Assembly (NCBI RefSeq): GCF_002113885.1
Contig: NW_018405944.1
Coordinates: 2,011,931 to 2,075,930 of the forward strand
Length of the DNA stretch: 64,000 nt
Direction of reading: 5' to 3'
From: Mizuhopecten yessoensis
Taxonomy: Eukaryota
The stretch's first letter is position 1. Every line of letters starts with the position of its first letter. Shown here piece by piece: positions 2,151 through 16,996 of this stretch. The notes under the pieces were generated by a model. It worked only from the letters and a program-made list of their open reading frames with translations, searched no databases and was not told the origin of the DNA. The position numbers and the translations under genes are program-made.

Positions 2151-2712
2151 GAAAGACGCACTGTTACCCCGTATAACTTAAGAGACTCTGATTTTTGCAC
2201 AACAGGATGAGCTACATAACCAATAATTAAGCATGGAGAAAGATTATTATTTTAAACAAACAGTTTGCAAATAAGTTATTTTTCATACTCCAATGAAAAT
2301 TAAAAACAAATCACTCTCAATTCTTAAATAATGATGTTTTCTTTGTTTTCAAACAAAATACCTGAATCTGACTGGTCAAAATGTTCGTTTCATTGTTTCA
2401 TGAAAAAGAAAGAAATATAAGCCACGACCACCGGAACTACGTTCGCCAAATAATTATTCTAAAATAAAAAACAATATTACAATCATATTCCACAAAAGAT
2501 GATTTAAACAACAAAACATTGTTTTTCTTTATTTACAAATATTTTATCTAATAGTTTTAACATATCTCAGTGATGATACAGCAGGAAATCCGGTCTGTCT
2601 CTTTATAACAAAGGAAAGCAGGCTGTAATATATACTGGTCACTACTGCAGGTCTATTATTTACAACAGACTTTTTTCTCATTAATGTTCATGACTTGTTT
2701 CTCTGTCTGTAT

Positions 2713-4536
2713 TTAGTCAAATACAGGCTCGACTGTGGCAGTCTGTCTGACGAAGCAGCACAGGAGATTTCTACGTATCCAGTCTCTCTTGTTATGGGCC
2801 TTGGATGCGCTCTTCTTCTTTCCACCGACTGAGGTGCTGGTGCTGCCACCTATTAAACATTGAAAATGACACATTTACATCGCGGATAACAGTATTTTTT
2901 AAAGGAAGGAAGAACAAAATGGTTTATTGATATGATTAAATCATGTTTTTCTTAAGTTTGACTCGGTACAGAATATAAAGTCACATAACCACACACAAGC
3001 AGAGAGCAAACGTGAAACGTCGGCACCTTCAGTAAACGAGAAAATACGTTTTTCTGATTAATTTTGAGAAACATGTTTTTACCCAAATATTTGATATACT
3101 GAAATTCATGAAACCATTCTCATGCTCAAACATGGATTTTTTCAAATCATTGACAAAATAACATTTGTTTATCAATGTATAACTAGAACAAGAAATTAGG
3201 CTTGGGCACAAAACCCATGCTTGAGCATGAGAACGGTTTCATGAATACGGGTCCGGATATGAACGATTTTATCGAGTGAATAATATTCTCACCAGCTGTA
3301 GCGGTATTCATTTCCTTCGCTTCTTTCTTGTTTCTCTAAAACCAAACGTGAAATCGAATTACATCAATTCAATCAAGCTCCTAAATATTTTCGATGGTCT
3401 TTTAATATTCTGTATTATTTGATACAGTTAGCAGAAAGCTTTTTTAATTGTTGTTTTACGTAAATTTTTTAATAAACATTGACAACATCGTGTAACATCA
3501 GTATAATTCCTCGTCTAATTGAACAACCCTTTCTCTGTGAAATTACGTATAGTCGTGAAAGCGTTTGATGTTTATTAAAAATATATATATACATTTTAGT
3601 TTTGGATTTCTATTAGAATGGTTAGAGATTGATTAACAATCTAATAAATAACATCTTTATCAACAGAAGACAGATATAGTAGCCTTACCTTGAGAATTCT
3701 GTCCAACAATCGTTCAAGTACATTCTTCTTTTGGGTGGCATTGGTCATCTGCGCATCCGTTGTAGCCTCGTGCCCTATCTTGAGTCCTGTCAGTTTGACG
3801 TCTTTATGAAGTAAGGCCGAAATTTGATTAAAGCGATGCTATTTTTTCATTATGATATAACGATATAAACAAACTCGTTTTAAAATTATCTCTTAATTAA
3901 TAACGTTAATAATAAATGAAATATAGCTTTGTGACTAGATGTCTACGTCTTTTTAAGAATTTGTTATTTCTTTGTACATAATGAAATACTTGAGTTGTTA
4001 AACTTAAGAAGTAAATAAAGCATACATGAGATCGGAATATTCTAATTTTTAAAATTACCTTTGACGGGGTCAGAGGTGATAATATGAGGCTGGTTATCGT
4101 TTCCTCCAACACTTGGTTTGATTCGACCATCTTTAATCTTTAGGGGCTTACTTCCTGTAGCGCCAGTTGTTACTTCCGATGTTGCAGTAACCAAGGTTTT
4201 GTGAAGTCCAATCATTCCCTCCGTCTTATTGTCAGTTGTAAAACTTTGACATTCGTGTATGGCTGTGATTGACCGTTCACTGGTCAGTCCTACAATGTCG
4301 TCTACTTCCTTATCCAGTTGTCCTGCCATTCCCTCAATCTTATTAACAGTTGGTGAAATTCGAAATTCGCGGATGTACATAATTGACCGTCCAATGGTCA
4401 TCTCTTCAATATCATCAACTCCCTGGTCAAGACCTTCGTTTATTTCCCTTGTTTCGGTATTTATTTTATCAACAGCTTTCTCTATTACACTCTTCACCAA
4501 AAGCTGTGCAATATTTCGCAGTTGTTCATCATCCAT
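2713..4536 (-). CDS. Uncharacterised 256-aa protein, copy A; putative AKAP-like (PKA-R-binding helix) with C-terminal di-cysteine motif
   Basis: Coding exons 4536-4059, 3801-3689, 3335-3293, 2849-2713 (478+113+43+137=771 nt), all GT-AG, phases 1/0/1, no stops. Acceptor at 4545-4546 just before the ATG; 5'UTR exon donor at 5613. Same exon structure in the paralogue at 12383-14167. Function is inference from motifs. Confidence 0.85.
3104..3254. mobile_element. MITE (Harbinger-like terminus) in an intron of copy A
   Basis: About 32-bp inverted repeats attcatgaaaccattctcatgctcaaacatgg / ccatgcttgagcatgagaacggtttcatgaat; absent from the homologous intron position of copy B (~13050). Confidence 0.7.
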
Positions 4537-4874
4537 TGTAGATTCTGAAAGAAAAATACTTCGTTAAATTGTATTTGTACGTTCATGGTATATTCCACCA
4601 CTTCTTTGCTTCAACAACTCTTTTTCATTGGTTAATAACTATGTATTATTGGACGATAGACCATGCGCGTGCATGTATTATTATCCAACAGACCATGTAG
4701 GTGCAACTCTATGATATTTGCTTGTGGCGGAGACTCGAGATATTATGAGTACCTGATTAGGTCTATATAGTAATGTTTCATTACTTACAAAATCTTTAAA
4801 ATGGAATGCAAATTACACGTTTCATTAGATACATCTATATCAAGACTACCCCTGTTTTAGAAAAAAAAACTTGC

Positions 4875-5520
4875 GGTGAGTTAAACAGTGACTATACGCT
4901 TAAGACAGGTATGATTAGTGAGGAAAGTAGCAACTCCACTTTAGACAGGTATGATTGATGATATAAACAGTAGCTCTGCTTTAGACAGGTATGATTGATG
5001 ATATAAACAGTAACTCCACTTTAGACAGGTATGATTGATGACATAAACAGTAGCTCTGCTTTAGACAGGTATGATTGATGACATAAACAGTAACTCCGCT
5101 TTATACAGGTATGATTGATGAGTTAAACAGTAGCTCTGCTTTAGACAGGTATGATTGATGACATAAACAGTAGCTCTGCTTTAGACAGGTGTAATAGGAC
5201 GAGGAAAAGTGATAAAGATAGTACCGTCGCTGGGGCTCGAACCCGCGACCCTTGGCTCTCCAGCCCGATGCTCTACCGCTAAGCTAAAGGGAAATTCCCT
5301 ACAGCTGACGCTTGTAAGGCAACCTAATTAATCCACATCTTTTACACTGGTATGATTGGTGGGTTAAACAGTAACTCTGCTTTAGACAGGTATGATTGAT
5401 GATATAAACAGTAATTCCGCTTAAGACAGGTATGATTGATGACATAAACAGTAACTCCGCTTTAAACAGGTGTGAATGATGAGTTAAACAGTGACTCCAC
5501 TTCAGACAGAAATGGTCGAC
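4875..5520. repeat. 40-bp minisatellite in intron 1 of copy A
   Basis: Unit ttagacaggtatgattgatga(g/c/t)(t/a)taaacagta(a/g)ctc(c/t)(a/g)ct, about 12 copies, interrupted at 5190-5346. Confidence 0.95.
5190..5346 (-). mobile_element. tRNA-containing solo-LTR-like element (Helenus-type TRIM candidate)
   Basis: 157 bp, TGT...ACA ends, flanks cagg/ctgg (4-bp TSD with 1 mismatch, defined by the interrupted repeat unit); minus strand has A-box TAGCTTAGCGG and B-box GGTTCGAGCCC. Confidence 0.75.
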
Positions 5521-5711
5521 AAGTGGTAAAATACATTGCGTTAAGTTAAAGCAGTTACGTATTCGGTTAAACTCAATTTGTTCATATTCAAAGAGACTAA
5601 GTACAGTACATACCTTTTAAAGATCCTGTTCCTTATTGCAAAGTGATTAAAACAAAAGTTAATTGTTTATCTCCTTCGAATTCGCACGTCTAGTTGACTG
5701 TAGCCTCCTTT

Positions 5712-5793
5712 GTCGCTAGCAACAGTGACAATGACGACAGGAAATCTCGCGTGACGATCGCCTATTGTGACGTCATAGAAATAAATATTTATA
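5712..5793 (-). promoter_or_regulatory. Promoter of copy A: TATA-like box, CRE, X-box-like motifs
   Basis: TATAAATA (minus, 5793-5786), TGACGTCA 5768-5775, GTGACAATGACGAC 5725-5738, GTCGCTAGCAAC 5712-5723; conserved with identical spacing in copy B. Confidence 0.65.
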
Positions 5794-6339
5794 GCCTGCG
5801 AACCACATTTTTTTATCTTTGCGGACAATGATAAATATTTATATTGATAGAATTCTAACAGGGACTCACGCAATTTTTTTTATAAATTTCCGTTGGACAT
5901 TCTTTGATAATATTAACACAATACTTGAAATACGCGATAAAAATGCACCAACAGAGAAAGCCTTTAATTTAAAGGGTAGACTATGTATGGAGTGCGCGCA
6001 GAAGGAATATCTACGGAAGCCCAGAAACGGCGAATGACGCGTGATAGTCGTATATATGAACTCATCAGTAGTTATTTACATTTGTGTTGCAGTGCCACTA
6101 GATAACAGTACCAACTAAAATGTTTGCATGATTCAATAAAAGCAAGTGTGTAGTAATATTAACAGTACAACATGTACCGTTGCATGACCTCTGACCCCCC
6201 AACACACACAAACACAAACAAACCAAAAACAAAACAAGATTGTTAATCAACGGTTAAAATACATGTAAATATATTTTGATAATCCTTTTTTTTAAATCAT
6301 CAACAAGAAATCACCGTGAAATTTAAGTCGGCGTATTCA

Positions 6340-7298
6340 ACGTCAAAAATGCGTCGTGTGCTAACTCCAGCTACAAACATTTGTAACGAACCCCTGTGTT
6401 CCAGCCATTATGCCTGACAGCGACGTCGCGGACGTGTCCCTAGAATATGGAATGACTGTGGTTTTGAATCAAGGAACATCATGTATATGGCGGGCCACCG
6501 AAGCGTGTCTGCTATGAGATCCTATAACCGGTCCTTTTCAACAGAACAGAATAATTCACTTTCCTCTAGAATCTACACTAGCGTCCGTTGCAAGTGGCGA
6601 AGCAGGTGAAATCGTCCCGGCTCGTCGGGCAGTCCCTCATCGATAGTAACACATACCGAATGCTCAAACGATGAGCTAGTCCTGTTGACACAGTCGATCG
6701 ACACAAGAATTCAGCAAATAGCATATTTTAAATCGTCTTCTAGTTTCAAAGGAAAACTCAATATTTCACGGATGCACTTTCTATCTCGTTCATTGAAAGT
6801 GGAACCGCTTCGTTGCCGGATGTTTAAACGTTCAGCTTTCTCCGCGAACACGAAATAAATTTCTGACTTTTGGCAACTAAAATATTTTATATGGTATTTT
6901 TGTTTTAAAAGATCTACTGTCAAATTTTAAGATAACCAATGCTTGTTAAACATGCTGGTAATGAAAATTAAATTAGCAAAAAATATGCAAAGTGGAACGA
7001 TTTGTTTATTGCTCAACTGTGTATTTCGTCACCGTTGTCAACGCTTCATCTTTCCCGCGAAAAAGGCTGTTCAATTAATGTTGTTTTCATGACGGTGTTT
7101 TGCTTTTTAGCGTGAAAAAAGACTATTAATAAAATAAAAGTGGATGTAATAGAATGTAAATATAAGGTTTGAAGTGCATCTTTTTAACATTTATGAGGGT
7201 ATGCTACACAGTTCCGTTCAAACTTATTCCATGATGCGCGTTAGCGGAGCTGTGTTGCATACCCTCATAAATGTTAAAAAGATGCATTTCAAACCTTA
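6340..7298 (+). mobile_element. Crypton-like (tyrosine recombinase) transposon remnant with terminal hairpin
   Basis: ~6383-6530 reads VTNPCVPA...(G)FESRNIMYMAGHRSVSAMRSYNR, the degenerate H-x-x-R / GH / catalytic-Y end of Crypton-type recombinases; about 53-bp inverted arms at 7163-7215 and 7245-7298. Confidence 0.65.
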
Positions 7299-8389
7299 AT
7301 TAATTATGTAGATTTTAGCATGCATCTAAGAACATAATATGCTGGCAACATTAAAGGACACTTATTGTAAATATCAGTTATTAAATAGGATTAAATTTTA
7401 ACATAAGCAGTAAATGAAAAGATATGGGTACGAGAAGCTTAAATCAGGAATAGTTAGTTTCAGAAATTATTTTATGACAAATGGGACCTCATTGACTTAC
7501 ACCTGTGTGAGTGTTAAATATGCGGTAATACAACTCCTCATAGATATTTAAATGACACAATTACTTTAAAATTATATCATTATCGTGTACAACATATTCC
7601 TACTATTAATTTGATACAGAATATAACACATATTACAAAAACGACAATCGTTAAAGAGCTATGGCGTATAACTGTCACTATTTCCCCAAGTCGGCATTTA
7701 TTAAGATGAAAAAAAAATAAGGAGTAAATAATTTCTAGTAGCGAAAATGCATAGAAGAGTTAAAAAACAATTGAATATTTTTTTTTTCAACTACTGAGAT
7801 ATTAGGTGTTTTTTTTTTTTTTTATATAATACTGCAGATATAACCATTTTCACTATATCTATGAAAGGGATTGGGTTTCCAACACTTTTAAGGAAACAAT
7901 GTACTTTCAACACGTTCCCATCCGAGGACAAACTTTTTGATATTGTTTTTGATTCCGTGTAACAAATGACAAAACCCCCGAAAAAACAAATAAACGTACG
8001 ACGGGAAAATGGTCCTTCTTTGGGAAAGTGCTCAAAATAATGAAAAACAGGGGTAATCAAATTTCTCAAAACTGCGACAGGTGTTTCTTGGTTTAATCAG
8101 TTGGTGTTTCCATATTGTTCTATGTTCAATCTAGCCGAATGTGTAAGGCTATTTACTTTTGACCAGAAAAGGAACAGTGCAAGTTCGAATCCACGTTCAG
8201 ATTAAAATTCTTCTTTATTACTTTTATATTTAAGCATGTTGTTATCTTCTTTCTAAACTACGTAATATTTTTATTTTTTTTAATCAATAGAACATTTTGT
8301 TTATATTTTAATAACATACCTATACATTTATCAGTTTTGTTTAGAATATTTTTGTTATCATTTAGTGTGACATACTTCTTAAGAATCAT

Positions 8390-10620
8390 GTCAACAAATC
8401 CTGTACACGTGTACAGTTCAGCTATGCTAAAAGCCTTTGAAGGTAAGACATCATTTTACATTACATTTATGAACTGTTTACCCACCAACTGACAAAAGTT
8501 ATTATATATGTTAAGAAGAATGAACAATTATGGCAAATATTTTACCAAAAATGCGGGGAAAAGTCATCATTGAGGATGGTCTCAATGGATTAAAATACAG
8601 GAAAACTGCAACACAAAGTAAGGAGCGCAATACACGTGTAAGATATTCTTTTCGAAAATTATATGTAATTTTACCATTCTAAGGTGCAGGAAGAACAAAA
8701 TCAGGATGTATGTTTTGTAAGAAAACAGGTAACGGCATGACAAATGTACCCTCACAGACATGTCTGCAGGTCTTTGTCAGTCATTAATGTGTGTTGATTC
8801 CCCAGGGAACACGATGTTGCAAGTCACACCTAAATTGCCCAAAACTGAACCAGGGGGTAACGGAAAATGTGACGGCATTGAAATGTAATTCAAAGGTGAC
8901 CACAGATAAATGAATCGTTTCTCTCACTGGACTGTGTAATGTTGCGATAAACACCAGTAAGATTGATTTTGACAACATGAATATGACAGATGATCAGTTA
9001 CACAATACAACTGGGTTGAATAGACAGCAATTTGATGACACGTGTTCCATAGTGAAGTCAATGAAGAAATCCAAATCGCACAGGTAGTCTAGATGGAATG
9101 CTCCTGATGAAGTTGCGTATAGGAGTGTCCGATAGGTAAATTTATAAATATTATTATTATATAAAATATATCTGCAATCTTCAAACCAAATCACACCTTC
9201 GAATTGTTACGTCGCTAAATAAATGGTGTCAATAATGTATTTATACGAAACCGTTATTATTTCATCAACACGTTGACTTATAACAGCGTACTACCACAAT
9301 AAAGATGTGCCAGAGCAATAAACCAAATGTCACATGCGTTACAATATAATATCATTTTTTCTCGTCAGATAATTATTAAACAAGTAAGTCTCTACAGCTC
9401 TTGGTGGTAGAAGCTTTAATTAAGAGTTAATTAACTCTATTGGATGTAAATGATATTACATCACCATTTATAAGATACTCTCTATATATATCTCAGTTTT
9501 GTTTATTCATTACAAAATATCGTCTCTCGATTAAGGCAAATCAGTATTTTAAGTGTCGGTTTATTGCTAGTCGTACTTTGTATACTTTACAAAGTTATAT
9601 TATACATTTCCTATTTTCACCAAATTTCATGTATCAATCTGTGTTAAATCATCCCGATGTTGACACGTTTATTTAACTTCATGGTCATTGCAACATTATG
9701 CAATCAGCAGCAGGCGGAAGGTGGCTCATTACATCGCAGCAGCAAAAAAGGCTTTGAAAAAGGACTTCGTACCATCGCACCTAGGACTTCAACATATCGC
9801 TAGATCAGACATCTTTAAAAAAAACATGCAACCGATTTAGCCGTTCAATTATTTTCCAATTTCACCTCAGATTCAGTTATTCTTATCATGGATGAACTAG
9901 CAGTGAGCAAAAATATCAAAGGAAATGTTTCTCTATGCCTAAGTACCGCCCCCTGATAAAACCCATGATGACCATGATGCTGGCTACAAACTAAGAGTTC
10001 TAACAATGAAGCGGCAATTATATATCTGCATGGATGAAACAGTAAGATATGATCACCCTTCAACGCGAATTTCGGGATATTCTTCCTTCTTTTCTCGAAG
10101 AAATTGAGATTGAAACGCACTCGCCAGCGTTCCTAAAAGAGGAAAGAAATAAATGTCAACCGAAGATGTCAACAATTCCCGGCTGGTAAAGAAAAATTCG
10201 TTGGGCGGTTGAAACTGTCAACGGTAGATTAAAAACCTGGAAGTACCTGTGCAGTATTGTACCAAACAAAGATCTGCCCAATGTATGGGATTTTATCAGC
10301 ATCATCGGGCCACCGTTGCGGACATCTCTACCGTCAGACTGTGACGTCGCTCGCCGAATGGTTGAATGTGCTGCAGCAGACAACACAGTTCAGTACCGTT
10401 TTATGAAAACATGGAAACATTTTCCGCAAAGCAACACAACCTCTTGGTGGAATTTTCAGAGCGCAATATAACCGGCTGGTACTGTTAATGTTCTGCTCAC
10501 ACGTAGCCATGGTATTAAGGTATTTGTGTTTTGCTCGTCATGTGCATTATCACCCCGGATTGGATTATTTCTCAGGACTGATTGTCAATGCTGCCGAATT
10601 ACCGAACGCAGGTAGTAGTG
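8390..10620 (+). mobile_element. Degenerate, intron-containing ISL2EU/PIF-Harbinger-type DDE transposase
   Basis: Fragments VLIPQGTRCCKSHL (~8790), IDFDNMNMTDDQLHNTTGLNRQQFDD (~8961), YIAAAKKALKKDFVPSHLGLQHIAR (~9730), REFRD..LEEIEIETHSPAFLK (~10064), MSTEDVNNSRLV / KIRWAVETVNGRLKTWKYL (~10153-10249); many frameshifts. Confidence 0.75.
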
Positions 10621-10762
10621 ATAAAATTTGAAATTGATAAAAATGGAATCCTTTCAAATCTTGTGTTACGATTTGTTATAAATTAACATAAGTAACGTGA
10701 AAGAGACATATATCTGTCATTTTGTTGGGATACCCTCGTCCCTCAACCTTGTGTTGTGCATG

Positions 10763-11113
10763 GTTTTGTTTGTTTTGTTTGTTTGTGTTCGTCCTATTAA
10801 CAGCTATGGTCATTAAGGACGTGCCAGGTTTGGTTTGTTTGTGTTCGTCCTATTAACAGCTATGGTCATTTAAGGACGTGCCAGGTTTGGTTTGTTTGTG
10901 TCCGTCCTATTAACAGCTATGGTCATTAAGGACGTGCCAGGTTTTGGTGGTGGAGGAAAGCCCGAGTTCCCGGAGTTCCCGGAGAAAAAACATAGACCTT
11001 ACGGCCAGTACCTGGCGACTGCCCCACCGTAGGCCTTGATCCCGCGACGCAGTGGTGGAGGGCTAGTGGTAGCAGAATGTCAGACGCCTTAACCACTTGG
11101 CCACTGCGGTTCC
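10763..11113 (-). mobile_element. tRNA-derived V-domain SINE with triplicated 3' tail
   Basis: Minus strand starts with a tRNA-like head (GTGGCCAAGTGGTTAAGGCG), has TTTTCTCCGGGAACTCCGG...TTTCCTCCACC, ends in (CAAA)n; last ~57 bp present three times (10781-10945). Confidence 0.8.
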
Positions 11114-11629
11114 TTGGTGTTATGCAAGGAGGTCCACTACGCTTATCAGTAATAATAATGAATAGTTTTATATGCAATTATTGTTCAGTTTTTATGTATC
11201 CACATATAGCGAAACAGTATAAAAAATTGGAGTAGGGACTGAATGTTGACCTCATCTTTGTGCTTTTGAACAAGATATTTGCTCTTGAATATTACTTTGA
11301 TCAGAAGCAAAGACAATGTGGAGAGGATTTGGTACCTTCTCAGGTTCGTGTACCCGTATGTTGTGACAGATGCAGAGAAGCTGTCTTAGGTGTTGTACTT
11401 CCCGGATGTGAAGAGACTGTAGTTATTTATATAGATAAATGTAGGACGGGTAGTGAGAGTAATAGCGAGTGTGAATACTGGTTGGTTCCTTTTTTAAATA
11501 TGTTGATGTAAATAACATTTGTGTATGCATAGTTGTTTTCCTCTGTTGTGATTTTTTTCCTGTTTCTATTTCCTTAATACTAAACTGAGGCTCGCCCTGT
11601 GTTATACTATGGTCCCATGTTTTATTAGG

Positions 11630-11669
11630 CAGAAGGAGGAGGAGGAGGAGGAGGAGGAGAAGAAGAAGA
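11630..11669. repeat. (GGA)n/(GAA)n microsatellite
   Basis: Direct reading. Confidence 0.9.
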
Positions 11670-12382
11670 TACGTCAAAATGACTCCAATTCCCTCTGGTA
11701 GTGTCTAAATATACATATATATGTATCAGTTTCTATAAACGAGACCATCCCTTGATAACTTGATTTTTTAGTAAGTATAAGCATACATACACACAAAACG
11801 AAAATAAGAAGAAAGACATCAGTGTTTATTAATAATTGAAACAAGATGTACGTATACAAATTGTCAAGCATGAAAACATATTTTATCAGTACTATTCATT
11901 ACTCGAAGCTCTGTGACGGCCAATATCAGAAAAAAATGATACTATTTTACCAATCGGATCGTTCCGCCCCTTTCCTTTGCATACTTGAGAGTCAGTGATA
12001 TCACGGAAATGGCCGAGCGCGGTCCGATATAAATTGTATTCTTTCGAAGCCTGGCGGAGAGTAGTGATAGTACGGGGGGCAATCCAGTCTATCTCTTAAT
12101 TACAATGACAAAAACTTGACTTGAACAATGAGTATTTCACTGCTAAAATTAAGATTGCTTTGACTAATGCTTAAACGGATTGGATTATTTAATTAAATAA
12201 AGTATATATCTTACGATAATTTCACTCTGTCACCAAACTTGAATCCGGGTTTCTTATTTTTTTACTTTTAGAAATTGATTCAATATTATCATTATTTTGT
12301 TTTTGTTTATATCGTTAATATGATACATGTAAGCCACATTATATTCGGAATGTCCATGACTTCGCTTGATGTATTTATTCAT

Positions 12383-14167
12383 TTATAGAGGCTCGACTGT
12401 GGCAGTCTGTCTGACGAAGCAGCACAGGAGATTTCTACGTATCCAGTCTCTCTTGTTATGGGCCTTGGATGCGCTCTTCTTCTTTCCACCGACTGAGGTA
12501 CTGGTGCTGCCACCTATTGGACATCGAAAGTAACACATTAACATTAAAATAACAATATATTAAAATGGAAGAGAGAACAAAATAGATAATTGATCTGATA
12601 AAACCATGCTCTTTTTTTTTTATTAAGTTTGACTCGGTACAGAACATAAAATCACATAACCCCGTGCACACGAGCTTTTCACACAAGCAGAGAGCAATCG
12701 GGACCATCGGCACTTTCCATAAACGTTAAAAATACGTTACGGAAAGTGCAGACGGTTCCTTCCCGATTAAAGCCGAGAAAAGGCCAAAAAACAGTTATTG
12801 AAAAGGCACCGGGAAAAAGGTCCGGTCCGGAACCTGATTCGCCTTTATAATTATAGACTTTTTCTTTCTATATCCCTTTTTTCTTTTGGCTTAACTCCAA
12901 TACCTAGCTGTGCCGATCGCATATAAATCATCTGGTAATCATTCAGACTTTTCTGGTATGTACCTATTTTAGTTCTTGCCTGACTTCAATGAAGCGGAAA
13001 TGCTATAGGGTATTTTTTCTCATTAATTTCCCAAATGTATGATCTACTGAAAGACCGGATCTGAACGATGTTATCGAGTGAATACTATTCTCACCTGCTG
13101 TAGCAGCATCGATTTCCTTAGCCTCTTTCTTGTCTCTCTGAAACAAAACGTTAAAATCGAATTGCATTAACTTAATCAAGCTAATAAATACATTAATTAA
13201 GTGTTTTAATATTATGTATGACTTATTTTTAAGTTATATATTAAACTTTGACTTTATTCATTCAAAGTCAGATGTTTCTTGTGTATTGAACGAGCCTTTC
13301 TGTGAAATTACATGTGGTGGTACTAGTGTTTGATGTTGATAAAGAAATAATATTTATTTCAATTTTGAGTTTTTGTTACAATGGTGAGACACTGATCAAC
13401 GATCTAATAGAAATGTTAATCGACCGAAGTTACCTTGAGGATCCTGTCCAACAATCGTCCCAGTACATTCTTCTTACCGAAAGTCTTGTTTAAATGCTCA
13501 TGCGTTGTAATCACGTGCTCTTTCTTCAGTTCTGTCGGCTTGTCGTCTTTGATAATAAAGACCGAAAAGAAACACAATTTGATCATTTTTATTTGATAAT
13601 TTTTTTTCTATTTTTCACTATAAATCAACGTTATAAACTGATTCGTTTTAAACGATATCTTAGTAACGTTAATAATAGATGAAATATAACTTTGTGACTA
13701 CATCTTTTTAGTAATATGCCATTTTGAAATACCTTGGTAGTTTAAGCTAAAGGAGTAAATAGCACATGCATGAGACAGGAATATTTTGATTTTTAAAAAT
13801 TACCTTTGACGGGGTGAGAGGTGATGATATGAGGCTTGTTATCGTTTCCTCCAACACTTGGTTTGATTCGATCATCTTTAATCTCCAGAGGCTTACTTCC
13901 TGTTGTGCCACTTGTTACTTCCGGTGTTGCAGTAACCAAGGTTTTGTTAAGTCCGAACATTCTCTCCATCTTGTTGTCAGTTGGTGACCTTTGACCTTCG
14001 CGTATGGCCGTGATTGACCGTCCAATGGTCAGTCCTACAATGCCGTCTACGCCCTGGTCAAGACCTTCATCCATTTGCCTGTTCTCGGTCTTTACTCTAT
14101 CAACGGCTTTCTCTATTACATCCTTCACCAAAATCTGTGCAATATTTCGCAGTTGTTCGTCATCCAT
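12383..14167 (-). CDS. Uncharacterised 216-aa protein, copy B; putative AKAP-like paralogue
   Basis: Coding exons 14167-13804, 13546-13434, 13137-13095, 12513-12383 (364+113+43+131=651 nt), GT-AG, phases 1/0/1, no stops; AATAAA on minus at 12379-12374; 5'UTR exon donor at 15583. Confidence 0.85.
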
Positions 14168-14519
14168 TGTAGATTCTGAAAAATGTAGTTCATGTCGTTA
14201 AATTATTGCCTGTAAGCTCATTCTACCACTTCTGTGAATCAACAACGCTTTTCATTGGTGTATTGTTGGACGATAAACCATGCACGTGCAGGCATTGTTT
14301 TCCAACAGACCATTCACATGCAACACTGTAAAGCACTATTTCCAGCCAATAACATATATGTTTGAGGCGGGGACTCGGAGATATTTCGAGTACATTTGTA
14401 CCTGTTTAGGTCAATATTAATGTTTCAAACAAATTGAATTGACCTAATGTGTAAAACGGAATGAATTTCATGTTATATTATACATCTGGATCAGAGGTAT
14501 CCCCATTTAAGAAAAATCT

Positions 14520-15485
14520 TGTTGGTGAATAAAACAGTATCTCCACTTAAGACAGGTATGATTGGTGAGTTTAACAGTAACTCCGCTGTAGACAGGTATG
14601 ATTGGTGAGTTAAATAGTAACTCCACTTTAGACAGGTATGATTGATGAGTTAAACAGTAACTCCACTTTAGACAGGTATGATTGATGAGTTTAACAGTAA
14701 CTCCACTTTAGACAGGTATGATTGGTGAGTTAAACAATAACTCCACTTTAGACAGGTATGATTGATGAGTTAAACAGTAACTCCACTTTAGACAGGTAGG
14801 ATTGATGAGTTTAACAGTAACTCCACTTTAGACATGTGTGATTAATGGTTTAAACAGTAACTTCACTTTAGACAGGTATGATTGATGAGTTAAACAGTTA
14901 CTCCACTTTAGACAGGTATGATTGGTGAGTTAAACAATAACTCCACTTTAGACAGGTACGATTGATTAGTTAAACAGTAAATCCACCTTAGACAGGTATG
15001 ATTGATGAGTTTAACAATAACTCCACTTTAGACAGGTACGATTGATGAGTTAAACAGTAAATCCACCTTAGACAGGTATGATTGATGAGTTTAACAATAA
15101 CTCCACTTTAGACAGGTACGATTGATGAGTTTAACAATAACTCCACTTTAGACAGGTATGATTGGTGAGTTAAACAATAACTCCACTTTAGACAGGTATG
15201 CTTGATGAATTTAGTCGTAACTCCGCTTTAGACAGGTACGATTGATGAGTTAAACACTAACTCCACTTTAGACAGGTATGATTGATGAGTTTAACAATAA
15301 CTCCACTTTAGACAGGTACGATTGATGAGTTAAACAATAACTCCACTTTAGACAGGTATGATAGGTGAGTTAAACTGTAACTCCACTTTATACAGGTACG
15401 ATTGATGAGTTTAACAGTAACTCCGGTTAAGGCATGTATGATTGTAGTTAAAGAGTAGTTACTCCTATTCAGTTATGGCTGATGA
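14520..15485. repeat. 40-bp minisatellite in intron 1 of copy B
   Basis: About 23 highly similar copies of ttagacaggtatgattgatgagttaaacagtaactccact. Confidence 0.95.
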
Positions 15486-15683
15486 GTACCAAAATACACT
15501 GTGTAGAGTCAAACAGTTTCATATCACAAACATATCGTAACAGTGTACATTTTATATATGGAGAATACGTGATTCATACGTACCTTCCGAAATAAAATAT
15601 CCTATACCTAGTTTAAAAGTTATCTTTTGGAACCAAAATAGTATATCTCCTTCGCACGTCTTCGTTAATCTGTAGCTTCCTTC

Positions 15684-15765
15684 GTCGCTAGCAACAGTGA
15701 CAATGACGACAGGAAATCTCGCGTGACGACTGCCTATTGTGACGTCATAGAAAGAAGTATTTATA
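15684..15765 (-). promoter_or_regulatory. Promoter of copy B: TATA-like box, CRE, X-box-like motifs
   Basis: TATAAATA (minus, 15765-15758), TGACGTCA 15740-15747, GTCGCTAGCAAC 15684-15695; 46-nt block identical to 5712-5757. Confidence 0.65.
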
Positions 15766-16552
15766 GCCCGCGAATAACCTGGTACAACCGTTAAGCGAAA
15801 AACGAATGCGACCCATTATGTAAACTACGAGATTTATAAATTGAAAGTAAGTTAGAATATCTTGCAACAGCAAAATGTACTGACACAGGCTAGTATATTT
15901 ATGTCAGTCAGTTCGCCATAATGCCGTTTTTATCCAAAGGGTATGTTAAATATTGATAGGTTTCACATTTACTGTACTGTAATAAGTAGCGAGAGTGTCT
16001 CCTTAAATGCAACATCGAACACACCGTGAATGATGTAAGCCTACCTCAAACGACGATTTTGTCATTCTAAAATGACCCTTAAATTCGACAATCGAGTAAA
16101 AGGGAACTATTTCTACAAAATAGTTGTCGATTCTTGTCGGATCCTTGCGATGACCGAGCATCAACTACAAAGCAGTGTTACTTGATTGGATAACTGCTGC
16201 TGATGCATCTGTAAACGATGCAAGGTCCACAGAGTCGTCTGCTAGTTCGTCTAGTATTAACACATTCATTATTTCCTCCATCTTGAAATTGTTTTCTGCG
16301 AACGCAGCGTACGGTAAGCACAGAACGTTCGCCAACAAAACGCTCGCGAACGTTCTCGCTACCGAACGCACCTCTTGTATCATTGCGGTCAACGATAATT
16401 GTTCATTTTGATGGAAATCTTACAAGACATTAATGCAGCTTTTTATGTATGAAAATATTAAAATAATACTTGAACGACCCGAAAATTTGACTAAATTATA
16501 AATCTACATGTAAATTGACCAAAAATGCTTCAACAGAGAATTTAATTAATTT

Positions 16553-16996
16553 CACTTCAGACAGATTCGGCTTATGAGATAAACAGTAATTCCGCTTTAG
16601 ACAGGTATCATTGATGAGATTGGCAGTAAATCCGCTTAAAACAGGTAATACTGAAGAATTTAGCAGTAAATCTGCTTCGGACAGATTTCATTTATGAGTT
16701 AAACGGTAACTCCACTCTAGACAGGTATGTTTGATTAGTTGAAAAAATAACTCCACTTAGACAGGTATATTTAAAGAATTCATCATGAACTCCTTTTAAG
16801 ACAGGTGTGATTGATGATTTAATATTTAATTCCACTCCAGACAGAAATGACCGATGAGTTTAAGAGTATTTACTCCCATTCAGACAGTATTACTGATGAG
16901 TACCGAAATACATCGTGTCAAGTCAAAACAATTTCATTTCACAAACATAAACCGCAAAAGTATACATTTTATATACAAGGAGAACACGTGATGCAT
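16553..16996 (-). pseudogene. Third, partial copy of the gene's intron 1 (degenerate 40-bp array plus flank), no exons seen
   Basis: About 8 diverged 40-bp units; 16890-16996 aligns with 15478-15577. Confidence 0.75.

What the first reader, a model, noticed from the sequence alone, without database searches (positions are those of the whole stretch)
2713..15775. Tandem pair of unannotated genes encoding a putative membrane-anchored AKAP
Seen: two intact paralogues with identical exon structure. N-termini DEQLRNIAQLLVKSVIEKAVDKI and DEQLRNIAQILVKDVIEKAVDRV; C-termini GGKKKSASKAHNKRDWIRRNLLCCF. Established: A-x-x-L-V-x-x-V-I-x-x-A fits the amphipathic PKA regulatory-subunit docking helix of AKAPs, and a basic/aromatic stretch followed by Cys-Cys is a typical S-palmitoylation membrane anchor. 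Inference: a lineage-specific small AKAP with a docking helix, a disordered fast-evolving linker and a lipid anchor at the C-terminus. The ORF track shows only the first exon, so the protein is easy to miss.
Basis: partly seen in the sequence, partly recalled or inferred. Interest (0 to 1): 0.75.

Follow-up and report, generated by a model that had tools for sequence, protein, structure and literature searches.

The report
Scallop-only candidate membrane AKAP gene pair
Two neighbouring, spliced genes of the Yesso scallop, already in NCBI as "uncharacterized", belong to a scallop-only family of mostly disordered proteins whose N-terminal helix fits the docking motif of protein kinase A anchoring proteins and whose tail carries an invariant Cys-Cys; the anchoring function is plausible but untested.

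Summary
Two head-to-tail four-exon genes lie on the minus strand (A 2713-4536, 256 aa; B 12383-14167, 216 aa). All splice sites are GT..AG. Transcript contigs from two studies join all three introns of gene A exactly as predicted.

"Unannotated" is wrong. The window is Mizuhopecten yessoensis, and NCBI lists both genes as uncharacterized LOC110450494 and LOC110450496. They belong to a family of about 12 copies in this genome. Relatives were found only in other scallops (Pecten, Ylistrum, Argopecten) among 1.84 billion representative proteins.

AlphaFold gives a confident N-terminal helix (pLDDT 81-88), a disordered linker (about 30) and no globular fold. The helix fits the published AKAP consensus LxxxAxxIVxxAIxxA in 19 of 25 members, against 0.2% of shuffles. 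Its hydrophobic face is conserved and its polar face varies. Trp235 and Cys242/Cys243 are invariant.

No Pfam AKAP model reaches threshold (best 14.1 bits, cut-off 22.7). Some members lack the helix. Neither PKA binding nor acylation could be tested.

Verdict: real, expressed genes and a credible but unproven lineage-specific AKAP candidate, probability about 0.4.

The parts
4059..4536 (-). Gene A (LOC110450494) exon 1: ATG at 4536, 478 nt, residues 1-159 plus 1 nt
   Evidence: equals P0001:1-159; transcript contigs at 4059-4527
4453..4530 (-). Gene A N-terminal amphipathic helix, residues 3-28 (AKAP-consensus-like: L6, A10, L13, V14, V17, I18, A21)
4207..4434 (-). Gene A: two copies of the 38-residue family repeat (residues 35-72 and 73-110); gene B has one
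3689..3801 (-). Gene A exon 2 (113 nt); its end encodes the first part of the conserved basic helix (residues 186-197)
   Evidence: (joints 3801|4059 and 3335|3689)
3293..3335 (-). Gene A exon 3 (43 nt)
2713..2849 (-). Gene A exon 4 coding part with TAA stop: Gly/Ser stretch, polybasic stretch, Trp235, Cys242-Cys243, conserved tail
   Evidence: (joint 2849|3293)
2755..2760 (-). Gene A Cys242-Cys243 codons, invariant in the family (candidate S-acylation site)
2550..2712 (-). Gene A 3' UTR (approximate): contigs reach 2566 and 2597; AATAAA at 2533
13804..14167 (-). Gene B (LOC110450496) exon 1: 364 nt, residues 1-121 plus 1 nt; lacks one 38-codon repeat relative to A
14084..14161 (-). Gene B N-terminal amphipathic helix, residues 3-28
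13434..13546 (-). Gene B exon 2 (113 nt)
13095..13137 (-). Gene B exon 3 (43 nt)
12383..12513 (-). Gene B exon 4 coding part with TAA stop; Cys204-Cys205 at 12419-12424
4537..5802 (-). Upstream part of duplicated block A. It has the conserved acceptor 8 nt before the ATG and a 40-bp minisatellite (4897-5190 and 5341-5509) split by a ~150-bp insertion
14168..15774 (-). Upstream part of duplicated block B, with the 40-bp minisatellite (14532-15457, 23 copies). Homology to block A ends at 15774

Best explanation
The two genes are real, spliced, protein-coding members of a family found only in scallops (Pectinidae). Each encodes a small, largely disordered cytosolic protein. Inferred mechanism: the near-C-terminal module (a polybasic stretch, an invariant Trp and an invariant Cys-Cys within a predicted helix) tethers the protein to a membrane through electrostatic contact and dual S-acylation. 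The conserved N-terminal amphipathic helix then acts as a docking helix. Its best candidate partner is the four-helix docking/dimerization (D/D, RIIa-fold) domain of a PKA regulatory-subunit dimer. On that reading the protein is a lineage-specific, lipid-anchored AKAP, analogous to but not homologous with AKAP18alpha or smAKAP. Shown here: gene structure, splicing of gene A, family distribution, helix and disorder prediction, motif fit and conservation pattern. Inferred only: acylation, membrane location, and binding to PKA R subunits.
For: Gene models: exon translations map contiguously onto NCBI proteins P0001 and P0005, and the spliced gene A transcript is seen in two studies. Family range: about 12 loci in this genome. 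A profile search of 1.84e9 representatives found 11 proteins; the 10 with a source name are scallop proteins, and one unnamed fragment came from an unidentified SRA run. A cross-genus profile search at E<=1 found only scallop proteins. Structure: with the cross-genus alignment AlphaFold gives helix 3-56 with pLDDT 81-88 over residues 1-30, a linker at about 30, a C-terminal helix 229-249 at about 69, and pTM 0.18. Motif: 19 of 25 members match a 16-mer patterned on the published consensus LxxxAxxIVxxAIxxA (PMC3682517) at the N-terminal helix, against 0.2% of composition-preserving shuffles. Hydrophobic residues fall at the spacing 2, 5, 6, 9, 10, 13, 14, 17 described for AKAP helices (PMC12083921). 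Face positions have mean entropy 0.76 bit against 1.68 for the others, and Ala21 is invariant. The only near-threshold Pfam hit of any N-terminal segment is AKAP7_RIRII_bdg (P0012, 14.1 bits, E 0.048). Anchor: Trp235, Cys242 and Cys243 are invariant across four genera. Exon 4 is the most constrained part (dN/dS 0.29, dS 0.036). Precedent: AKAP18alpha is targeted by myristoylation of its N-terminal Gly plus palmitoylation of Cys4/Cys5 (PMC2174236). Partners exist: at least four distinct RIIa-domain exons above the Pfam cut-off in this genome.
Against: No curated AKAP model is matched above threshold: RII_binding_1 gave nothing and AKAP7_RIRII_bdg gave 14.1 bits against a cut-off of 22.7, in one member of eleven. 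The i, i+3/i+4 aliphatic pattern is common to many helices that pack against other helices. The looser 12-mer pattern occurs in 16% of shuffles. My strict pattern's substitution classes were chosen after seeing the data. The Kyte-Doolittle hydrophobic moment of residues 5-26 is not exceptional (P = 0.13 against shuffles). P0017 and P0028 lack the helix, and P0013 and P0016 have substitutions at face positions. Two RNA-seq runs read as raw reads show no expression, and the expressing tissue is unknown. No binding data exist, and no paper mentions these loci.
Confidence: 0.4

Rival explanations
1. The protein is a membrane-tethered disordered scaffold whose N-terminal helix is a docking or self-association helix unrelated to PKA or to any RIIa-fold partner. 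It could be a homo-oligomeric coiled coil or could bind another scallop-specific partner. On this reading the 38-residue repeats, with their conserved Ser-Pro-Thr-Asp sites, are the main functional units and may be regulated by phosphorylation.
For: The repeat (1-4 copies) and the C-terminal module are the most widely shared parts, and members without the N-helix exist. No AKAP Pfam model passes threshold. The helix pattern is generic for packed helices, and the hydrophobic moment is unexceptional. dN/dS of 0.5-0.8 over most of the protein and tandem expansion are typical of fast-evolving lineage-specific genes.
Against: The 16-residue fit to the AKAP consensus includes small residues at consensus positions (Ala10, Ala21, Ala/Val17). 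It is conserved in four genera and rare in shuffles. The only near-hit among 24,736 Pfam models is an AKAP docking domain. AlphaFold shows no confident intramolecular packing (pTM 0.18).
Confidence: 0.35
2. The helix docks to an RIIa/DPY-30-fold domain of a non-PKA protein, such as ropporin-, SPA17- or CABYR-like 'R2D2' proteins of cilia and sperm flagella. The mechanism would be AKAP-like, but the protein would not anchor PKA.
For: The genome encodes several distinct RIIa-domain exons. The fast-evolving, tandemly expanded family with restricted expression would suit a reproductive or ciliary role. From general knowledge, AKAP-type helices also bind R2D2 proteins.
Against: There is no expression or localisation evidence for testis or cilia. 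The helix lacks any feature known to me that selects R2D2 over PKA R subunits. Not testable here.
Confidence: 0.15
3. The open reading frames are not functional: they are non-coding transcripts or decaying duplicates, and the motifs are chance.
For: dN/dS between A and B is high in exons 1-2 (0.65-0.83). There is no expression in two RNA runs. There are no homologues outside scallops.
Against: Reading frames and intron phases are intact in both copies, and most of the roughly 12 paralogues are open. Orthologous family members with the same exon layout exist in Pecten. Invariant residues persist across four genera. Exons 3-4 show strong constraint. The spliced transcript is observed.
Confidence: 0.04

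Closest known systems
AKAP18alpha / AKAP15 (AKAP7 short isoform)
   Same: Both are small proteins with one aliphatic docking helix plus a lipid anchor built on adjacent cysteines; AKAP18alpha is targeted by myristoylated Gly and palmitoylated Cys4/Cys5 (PMC2174236). One family member (P0012) gives a sub-threshold hit to Pfam AKAP7_RIRII_bdg over the helix.
   Different: Homology is not detectable: 14.1 bits against a cut-off of 22.7, in one member only. The order is reversed, with the helix at the extreme N-terminus and the Cys pair near the C-terminus. There is no N-terminal Gly for myristoylation. The scallop proteins also carry 38-residue repeats and a long disordered linker, and they are restricted to scallops.
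smAKAP (C2orf88)
   Same: It is a small membrane-tethered AKAP whose anchoring helix sits in an otherwise unstructured protein (PMC12083921).
   Different: smAKAP is vertebrate-specific and RI-selective through an aromatic-Ala ('FA/YA') pair at helix positions 1-2 (PMC12083921). In the register where the consensus Leu is position 2, those positions are Gln5-Leu6 here (Ile9-Ala10 in the alternative register). Neither pair has the aromatic residue, so an RI-selective mode is not indicated. No sequence similarity was found.
AKAP79/150 (AKAP5)
   Same: It combines polybasic membrane-targeting regions, palmitoylation and a PKA helix. AKAP150 also carries a lineage-specific internal repeat (PMC12083921).
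   Different: AKAP5 is much larger, is a tetrapod family, has its helix at the C-terminus and has defined PP2B, PKC and adenylyl cyclase sites. No homology was found.
Synthetic and natural RII-binding helices (AKAP-is, Ht31) and the consensus LxxxAxxIVxxAIxxA
   Same: The scallop helix reads L-x-x-I-A-x-x-L-V-x-x-V/A-I-x-x-A. This is the same spacing, with Ala at the first and last Ala positions of the consensus (PMC3682517; peptide sequences in PMC4526808 Table 1).
   Different: Leu replaces Ile at the first core position, and Val often replaces Ala at the third small position. No affinity has been measured.
Lipid-anchored disordered 'GMC' proteins (GAP-43, MARCKS, BASP1)
   Same: They are highly charged, disordered proteins held at membranes by acyl groups plus a basic effector stretch containing Ser (comparison from general knowledge).
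   Different: Their anchors are N-terminal. There is no sequence similarity and they have no AKAP-type helix.

Membership tests
A-kinase anchoring proteins (a functional class) | A 14-18-residue amphipathic helix with aliphatic residues at positions 2, 5, 6, 9, 10, 13, 14, 17 (consensus LxxxAxxIVxxAIxxA) | tested here: met
   19 of 25 members match a 16-mer patterned on the consensus, against 0.2% of shuffles. Face positions are conserved. The helix is predicted at pLDDT 81-88. Consensus taken from PMC3682517 and PMC12083921. Caveat: the substitution classes were set after seeing the data.
A-kinase anchoring proteins (a functional class) | Direct, helix-dependent binding to the D/D domain of PKA RI or RII (overlay, pull-down, competition by Ht31/AKAP-is, loss with a proline substitution) | not testable with these tools
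   No complex prediction or binding assay is available. RIIa-domain genes are present in the genome.
A-kinase anchoring proteins (a functional class) | A targeting determinant that places the complex at a defined site | tested here: inconclusive
   An invariant Trp and Cys-Cys next to a polybasic stretch within a predicted helix fit a lipid or electrostatic anchor. Neither acylation nor localisation was shown.
Pfam PF10470 AKAP7_RIRII_bdg | Score at or above the gathering cut-off (22.7 bits) | tested here: not met
   The best score is 14.1 bits (E 0.048), for P0012 residues 2-24 only. Ten other N-terminal segments and the window's exons gave no hit. The single own-genome hit lies at another locus.
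Pfam PF10522 RII_binding_1 | Score at or above the gathering cut-off (18.8 bits) | tested here: not met
   No hit at E<=10 in any scan. The genome-wide search with this 19-position model had no power, since its controls also found nothing.
S-acylated peripheral membrane proteins | Cysteine(s) next to basic or hydrophobic residues in a protein without a transmembrane segment; acyl group shown chemically | tested here: inconclusive
   The sequence context is present and the Cys pair is invariant. There is no transmembrane helix in the model.
Pectinid 'uncharacterized protein' family (LOC110450494-like) | Significant full-length similarity, shared four-exon layout, N-helix / 38-residue repeat / basic helix / W..CC tail | tested here: met
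   E-values from 1e-32 to 1e-145 to members in four scallop genera. The same layout is seen at the Pecten maximus locus L015.

The most novel reading that the evidence does not exclude
The family is a multivalent anchoring scaffold. Besides the N-terminal helix, each 38-residue repeat (L-D-x-x-V-D-D-I-V-x-L-T/A-I-G-R-S...) would be a second, weaker D/D-docking helix followed by a Ser-Pro-Thr-Asp phospho-switch. Repeat number (1-4, differing between paralogues such as genes A and B) would then set how many PKA or RIIa-fold dimers one lipid-anchored molecule clusters. That would be a scallop-specific way to tune local cAMP signalling by copy-number change of a docking module.
Probability: 0.08. 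Interest if true: 0.65.

Novelty: new member of a known kind. Interest (0 to 1): 0.4.

Why it matters
AKAPs are defined by function, not ancestry. A recent evolutionary survey places their main expansion in vertebrates (PMC12083921), and I found no lineage-restricted invertebrate AKAP described in the papers I searched. If the N-terminal helix binds PKA R subunits, this would be an independently evolved, lipid-anchored small AKAP, expanded to about a dozen copies in scallops. It would show that the recurring design of docking helix, floppy linker and acyl anchor arose by convergence, and it would give a handle on compartmentalised cAMP signalling in a mollusc. If it does not bind PKA, the result is still a clean description of a scallop-only orphan family with a defined modular layout, plus a correction of a chimeric gene model in the original genome annotation.

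Tried and rejected
1. Pfam scan of every exon of both genes: no family.
2. PDB sequence search with residues 1-45: only designed helical repeats and unrelated helices at E >= 0.008, and no AKAP peptide. This is uninformative for so short a helix.
3. ESM Atlas look-alikes: best feature score 0.78, and structural TM at most 0.33, both at chance level.
4. Genome-wide search with PF10522: no power, because the controls were also silent.
5. Test of whether the N-helix is 'repeat zero' of the 38-residue repeat: hhalign picks the expected register but is not significant (P 0.077, probability 0.7%). Left open.
6. Hydrophobic moment as a test of amphipathicity: not significant (P 0.13), probably because the apolar face is broad.
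7. Looking up the expressing tissue: run identifiers are coded; exact-protein look-ups for P0001 and P0005 returned nothing; no paper cites the LOC identifiers.
8. The regex [AVLISE]xx[AVLIF][AVLI]xx[AVLI][AVLIF]xx[AVLISE], which I recalled from memory, could not be verified in the paper library. I use it only as a 'loose' pattern and cite the Gold et al. consensus instead.
9. Fold search was not run, because pTM 0.17-0.18 means there is no fold to compare.
Searches used exon references or the database proteins P0001 and P0005, which equal the exon translations.

Full report
WHAT IS THERE

The window is scaffold G000:C2617:2011931-2075930 of a 988-Mb, 82,659-contig assembly. Protein hits identify it as the Yesso scallop, Mizuhopecten yessoensis.

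Two long ORFs lie on the minus strand, at 4042-4536 and 13793-14167, and two short ones at 2713-2874 and 12383-12544. Aligning 2500-4800 with 12170-14430 shows a tandem duplication at 80% mean identity. Four better-conserved blocks are bounded by canonical splice signals.

The exon coordinates are as follows:
- Gene A: 4536-4059 (478 nt), 3801-3689 (113 nt), 3335-3293 (43 nt), 2849-2713 (137 nt including TAA), giving 256 aa.
- Gene B: 14167-13804 (364 nt), 13546-13434, 13137-13095, 12513-12383, giving 216 aa.
- Intron phases are 1, 0 and 1 in both genes.
- The length difference is one extra 38-codon repeat in exon 1 of gene A.

Exon translations, taken by reference, map contiguously onto two database proteins returned by the search. 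P0001 is NCBI 'uncharacterized protein LOC110450494' (256 aa) and P0005 is LOC110450496 (216 aa). These database proteins were used wherever a full-length query was needed. The genes are therefore not unannotated. The original genome project's model KP79_PYT09444 (P0022, 319 aa) is a chimera of gene B exon 1, gene A exons 2-4 and upstream ORFs.

EXPRESSION

I laid four runs on 2400-8399 at 97% or more identity. Transcript-like contigs of two studies (X1, X3) carry joints 2849|3293, 3335|3689 and 3801|4059, all GT..AG on the minus strand. One 589-nt contig covers 2597-2846, 3290-3335, 3689-3801 and 4059-4238 with a single mismatch.

Two RNA-seq runs read as raw reads (X17, X22; about 12 million reads each) have no read on any exon. 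Expression is therefore restricted to some tissues or stages, which I could not identify. Gene B splicing and the 5' non-coding exon were not resolved; the exon is implied by a conserved acceptor 8 nt before the ATG in A, B and Pecten.

FAMILY

Exon 1 finds about 12 loci in this genome, six of them on this scaffold. Exon 4 finds 12 copies at 86-100% nucleotide identity.

A profile of ten Mizuhopecten members was searched with HMMER against 1.84 billion representative proteins. It found 11 proteins. The ten that carry a source name come from Mizuhopecten, Ylistrum balloti, Argopecten irradians and Pecten maximus. The eleventh is an unnamed fragment from an SRA assembly whose organism I did not identify. 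A cross-genus profile search of the 5.8-billion-protein set at E<=1 again returned only scallop proteins. The Pecten locus L015 has the same exon layout. This is a Pectinidae-restricted orphan family. No paper in the library cites the locus names.

ARCHITECTURE

The cross-genus alignment shows five modules:
1. An N-terminal helix.
2. One to four copies of a 38-residue repeat, consensus xLDxxVDDIVxLTIGRSITAIRxGQTSPTDxKM.
3. A variable linker.
4. A basic helix, KKNxLxRxLDRILKRxKK.
5. A Gly/Ser stretch and then a polybasic stretch leading into ...KRDWIRRNLLCCFVRQTATVEP, followed by a few variable residues.

Met1, Lys228, Trp235, Cys242 and Cys243 are invariant.

AlphaFold2 with the 15-sequence cross-genus alignment gives the following. 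An earlier run with ten same-species paralogues only gave mean pLDDT 37.
- pLDDT 86/88/81 for residues 1-30, as a helix.
- pLDDT 50-66 over the repeats.
- pLDDT about 30 for residues 92-182.
- pLDDT 57-63 for helix 187-211.
- pLDDT about 69 for helix 229-249.
- pTM 0.18, meaning no globular fold.

Between A and B, dN/dS is 0.65 (exon 1), 0.83 (exon 2), 0.17 (exon 3) and 0.29 (exon 4). Exon 4 has only one synonymous change (dS 0.036, against 0.18-0.77 elsewhere), although the flanking introns are 65-77% identical. Gene conversion or an additional nucleotide-level constraint could explain this; I did not separate them.

Two corrections apply: the Cys pair lies 13-15 residues from the C-terminus, and the repeat module was overlooked.

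IS IT AN AKAP?

The published definition is a 14-18-residue amphipathic helix whose aliphatic face occupies positions 2, 5, 6, 9, 10, 13, 14 and 17 and inserts into the D/D groove (PMC12083921). The consensus is LxxxAxxIVxxAIxxA (PMC3682517). Reference peptides such as AKAP-is and Ht31 are listed in PMC4526808, Table 1.

Evidence for:
- The scallop helix reads L6-x-x-I9-A10-x-x-L13-V14-x-x-V/A17-I18-x-x-A21-V22-x-x-I25.
- A 16-mer pattern built on the consensus with conservative classes matches at this place in 19 of 25 family proteins, against 0.2% of shuffled family sequences.
- Across 18 distinct helices, the ten face positions are at least 89% hydrophobic, with mean entropy 0.76 bit against 1.68 for the other positions. 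Ala21 is invariant, and Leu6, Ile9 and Ala10 are present in 17 of 18.
- The only near-threshold Pfam hit of any N-terminal segment, out of 24,736 models, is AKAP7_RIRII_bdg (P0012 residues 2-24, 14.1 bits, E 0.048).
- The genome encodes several RIIa-fold domains that could serve as partners.
- Lipid-anchored small AKAPs are precedented. AKAP18alpha uses a myristoylated Gly and palmitoylated Cys4/Cys5 (PMC2174236).

Evidence against:
- Nothing reaches a curated threshold.
- The loose 12-mer pattern occurs in 16% of shuffles, and my strict classes were chosen after seeing the data.
- The Kyte-Doolittle hydrophobic moment is unexceptional (P 0.13).
- Two members lack the helix and two have substitutions on the face.
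- This residue spacing is shared by many packed helices.
- Binding and acylation cannot be tested here.

I put the probability that the helix really docks PKA R subunits at about 0.4. A further 0.15 goes to docking on a non-PKA RIIa-fold protein. About 0.35 goes to an unrelated docking or self-association role. About 0.04 goes to non-function.

AN OPEN POINT

The 38-residue repeat has the same i, i+3/i+4 spacing as the N-helix (L-x-x-x-V-x-x-I-V-x-x-T/A-I-x-x-S). In several paralogues it matches the loose pattern, and in P0014 the strict one. A profile-profile comparison of the N-helix with the repeat picks that register but is not significant. Whether the repeats are degenerate docking helices, phospho-regulated modules (each has a conserved Ser-Pro-Thr-Asp) or something else is unknown.

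VERDICT

If true, it is a new, convergently evolved member of a known functional class. If false, it remains an uncharacterised scallop-only family of disordered, probably lipid-anchored proteins.

Noticed in passing
window 4897-5190, 5341-5509, 14532-15457, 16574-16768: A 40-bp minisatellite lies upstream of both genes, inside the duplicated block. There are about 11 copies upstream of A, split by an insertion, and 23 upstream of B; a third, more diverged array lies at 16.6 kb.
   Followed up: partly
window 5190-5346: A ~150-bp element is inserted in gene A's minisatellite. It is heavily represented in RNA contigs and reads (word depth 600-1000) with many different loose ends, so it is a high-copy repeat transcribed in many contexts.
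   Followed up: partly
window 3216-3250 (intron 3 of gene A): A ~35-nt segment has very high RNA depth (up to about 4000 word depth) and loose ends on both sides in all four runs. It is a short sequence shared with many other transcripts or repeats, not part of this gene's mRNA.
   Followed up: no
window about 2713-16392; protein P0022: The original genome annotation KP79_PYT09444 (319 aa) is a chimera. It combines upstream ORFs near 16.2-16.4 kb and about 15.5 kb, gene B exon 1 and gene A exons 2-4.
   Followed up: partly
L014:1333-1710 (G000:C2300:1050282-1050371): An unrelated ORF in the scallop genome gives the best own-genome score to Pfam AKAP7_RIRII_bdg: 17.7 bits, below the cut-off, over a helix of the type A-L-E-L-A-K-R-L-E-D-D-A-A-L-N-A-V. 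It may be another AKAP-like docking helix.
   Followed up: no
window 2713-2849 and 12383-12513: Exon 4 is almost identical at synonymous sites between A and B (dS 0.036), while the introns are 65-77% identical. There are 12 copies genome-wide at 86-100% identity. Gene conversion and nucleotide-level constraint were not separated.
   Followed up: partly
window 10772-10944: A 56-bp tandem repeat, 3.1 copies at 96% match, lies in the spacer between the two genes.
   Followed up: no
Pecten maximus proteins P0024, P0025, P0026: Some NCBI isoform models in Pecten start at upstream in-frame ATGs and add a short hydrophobic N-terminal extension before the conserved Met-Glu-Asp start. This is probably an artefact of choosing the longest ORF, but it would change the topology if real.
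   Followed up: no
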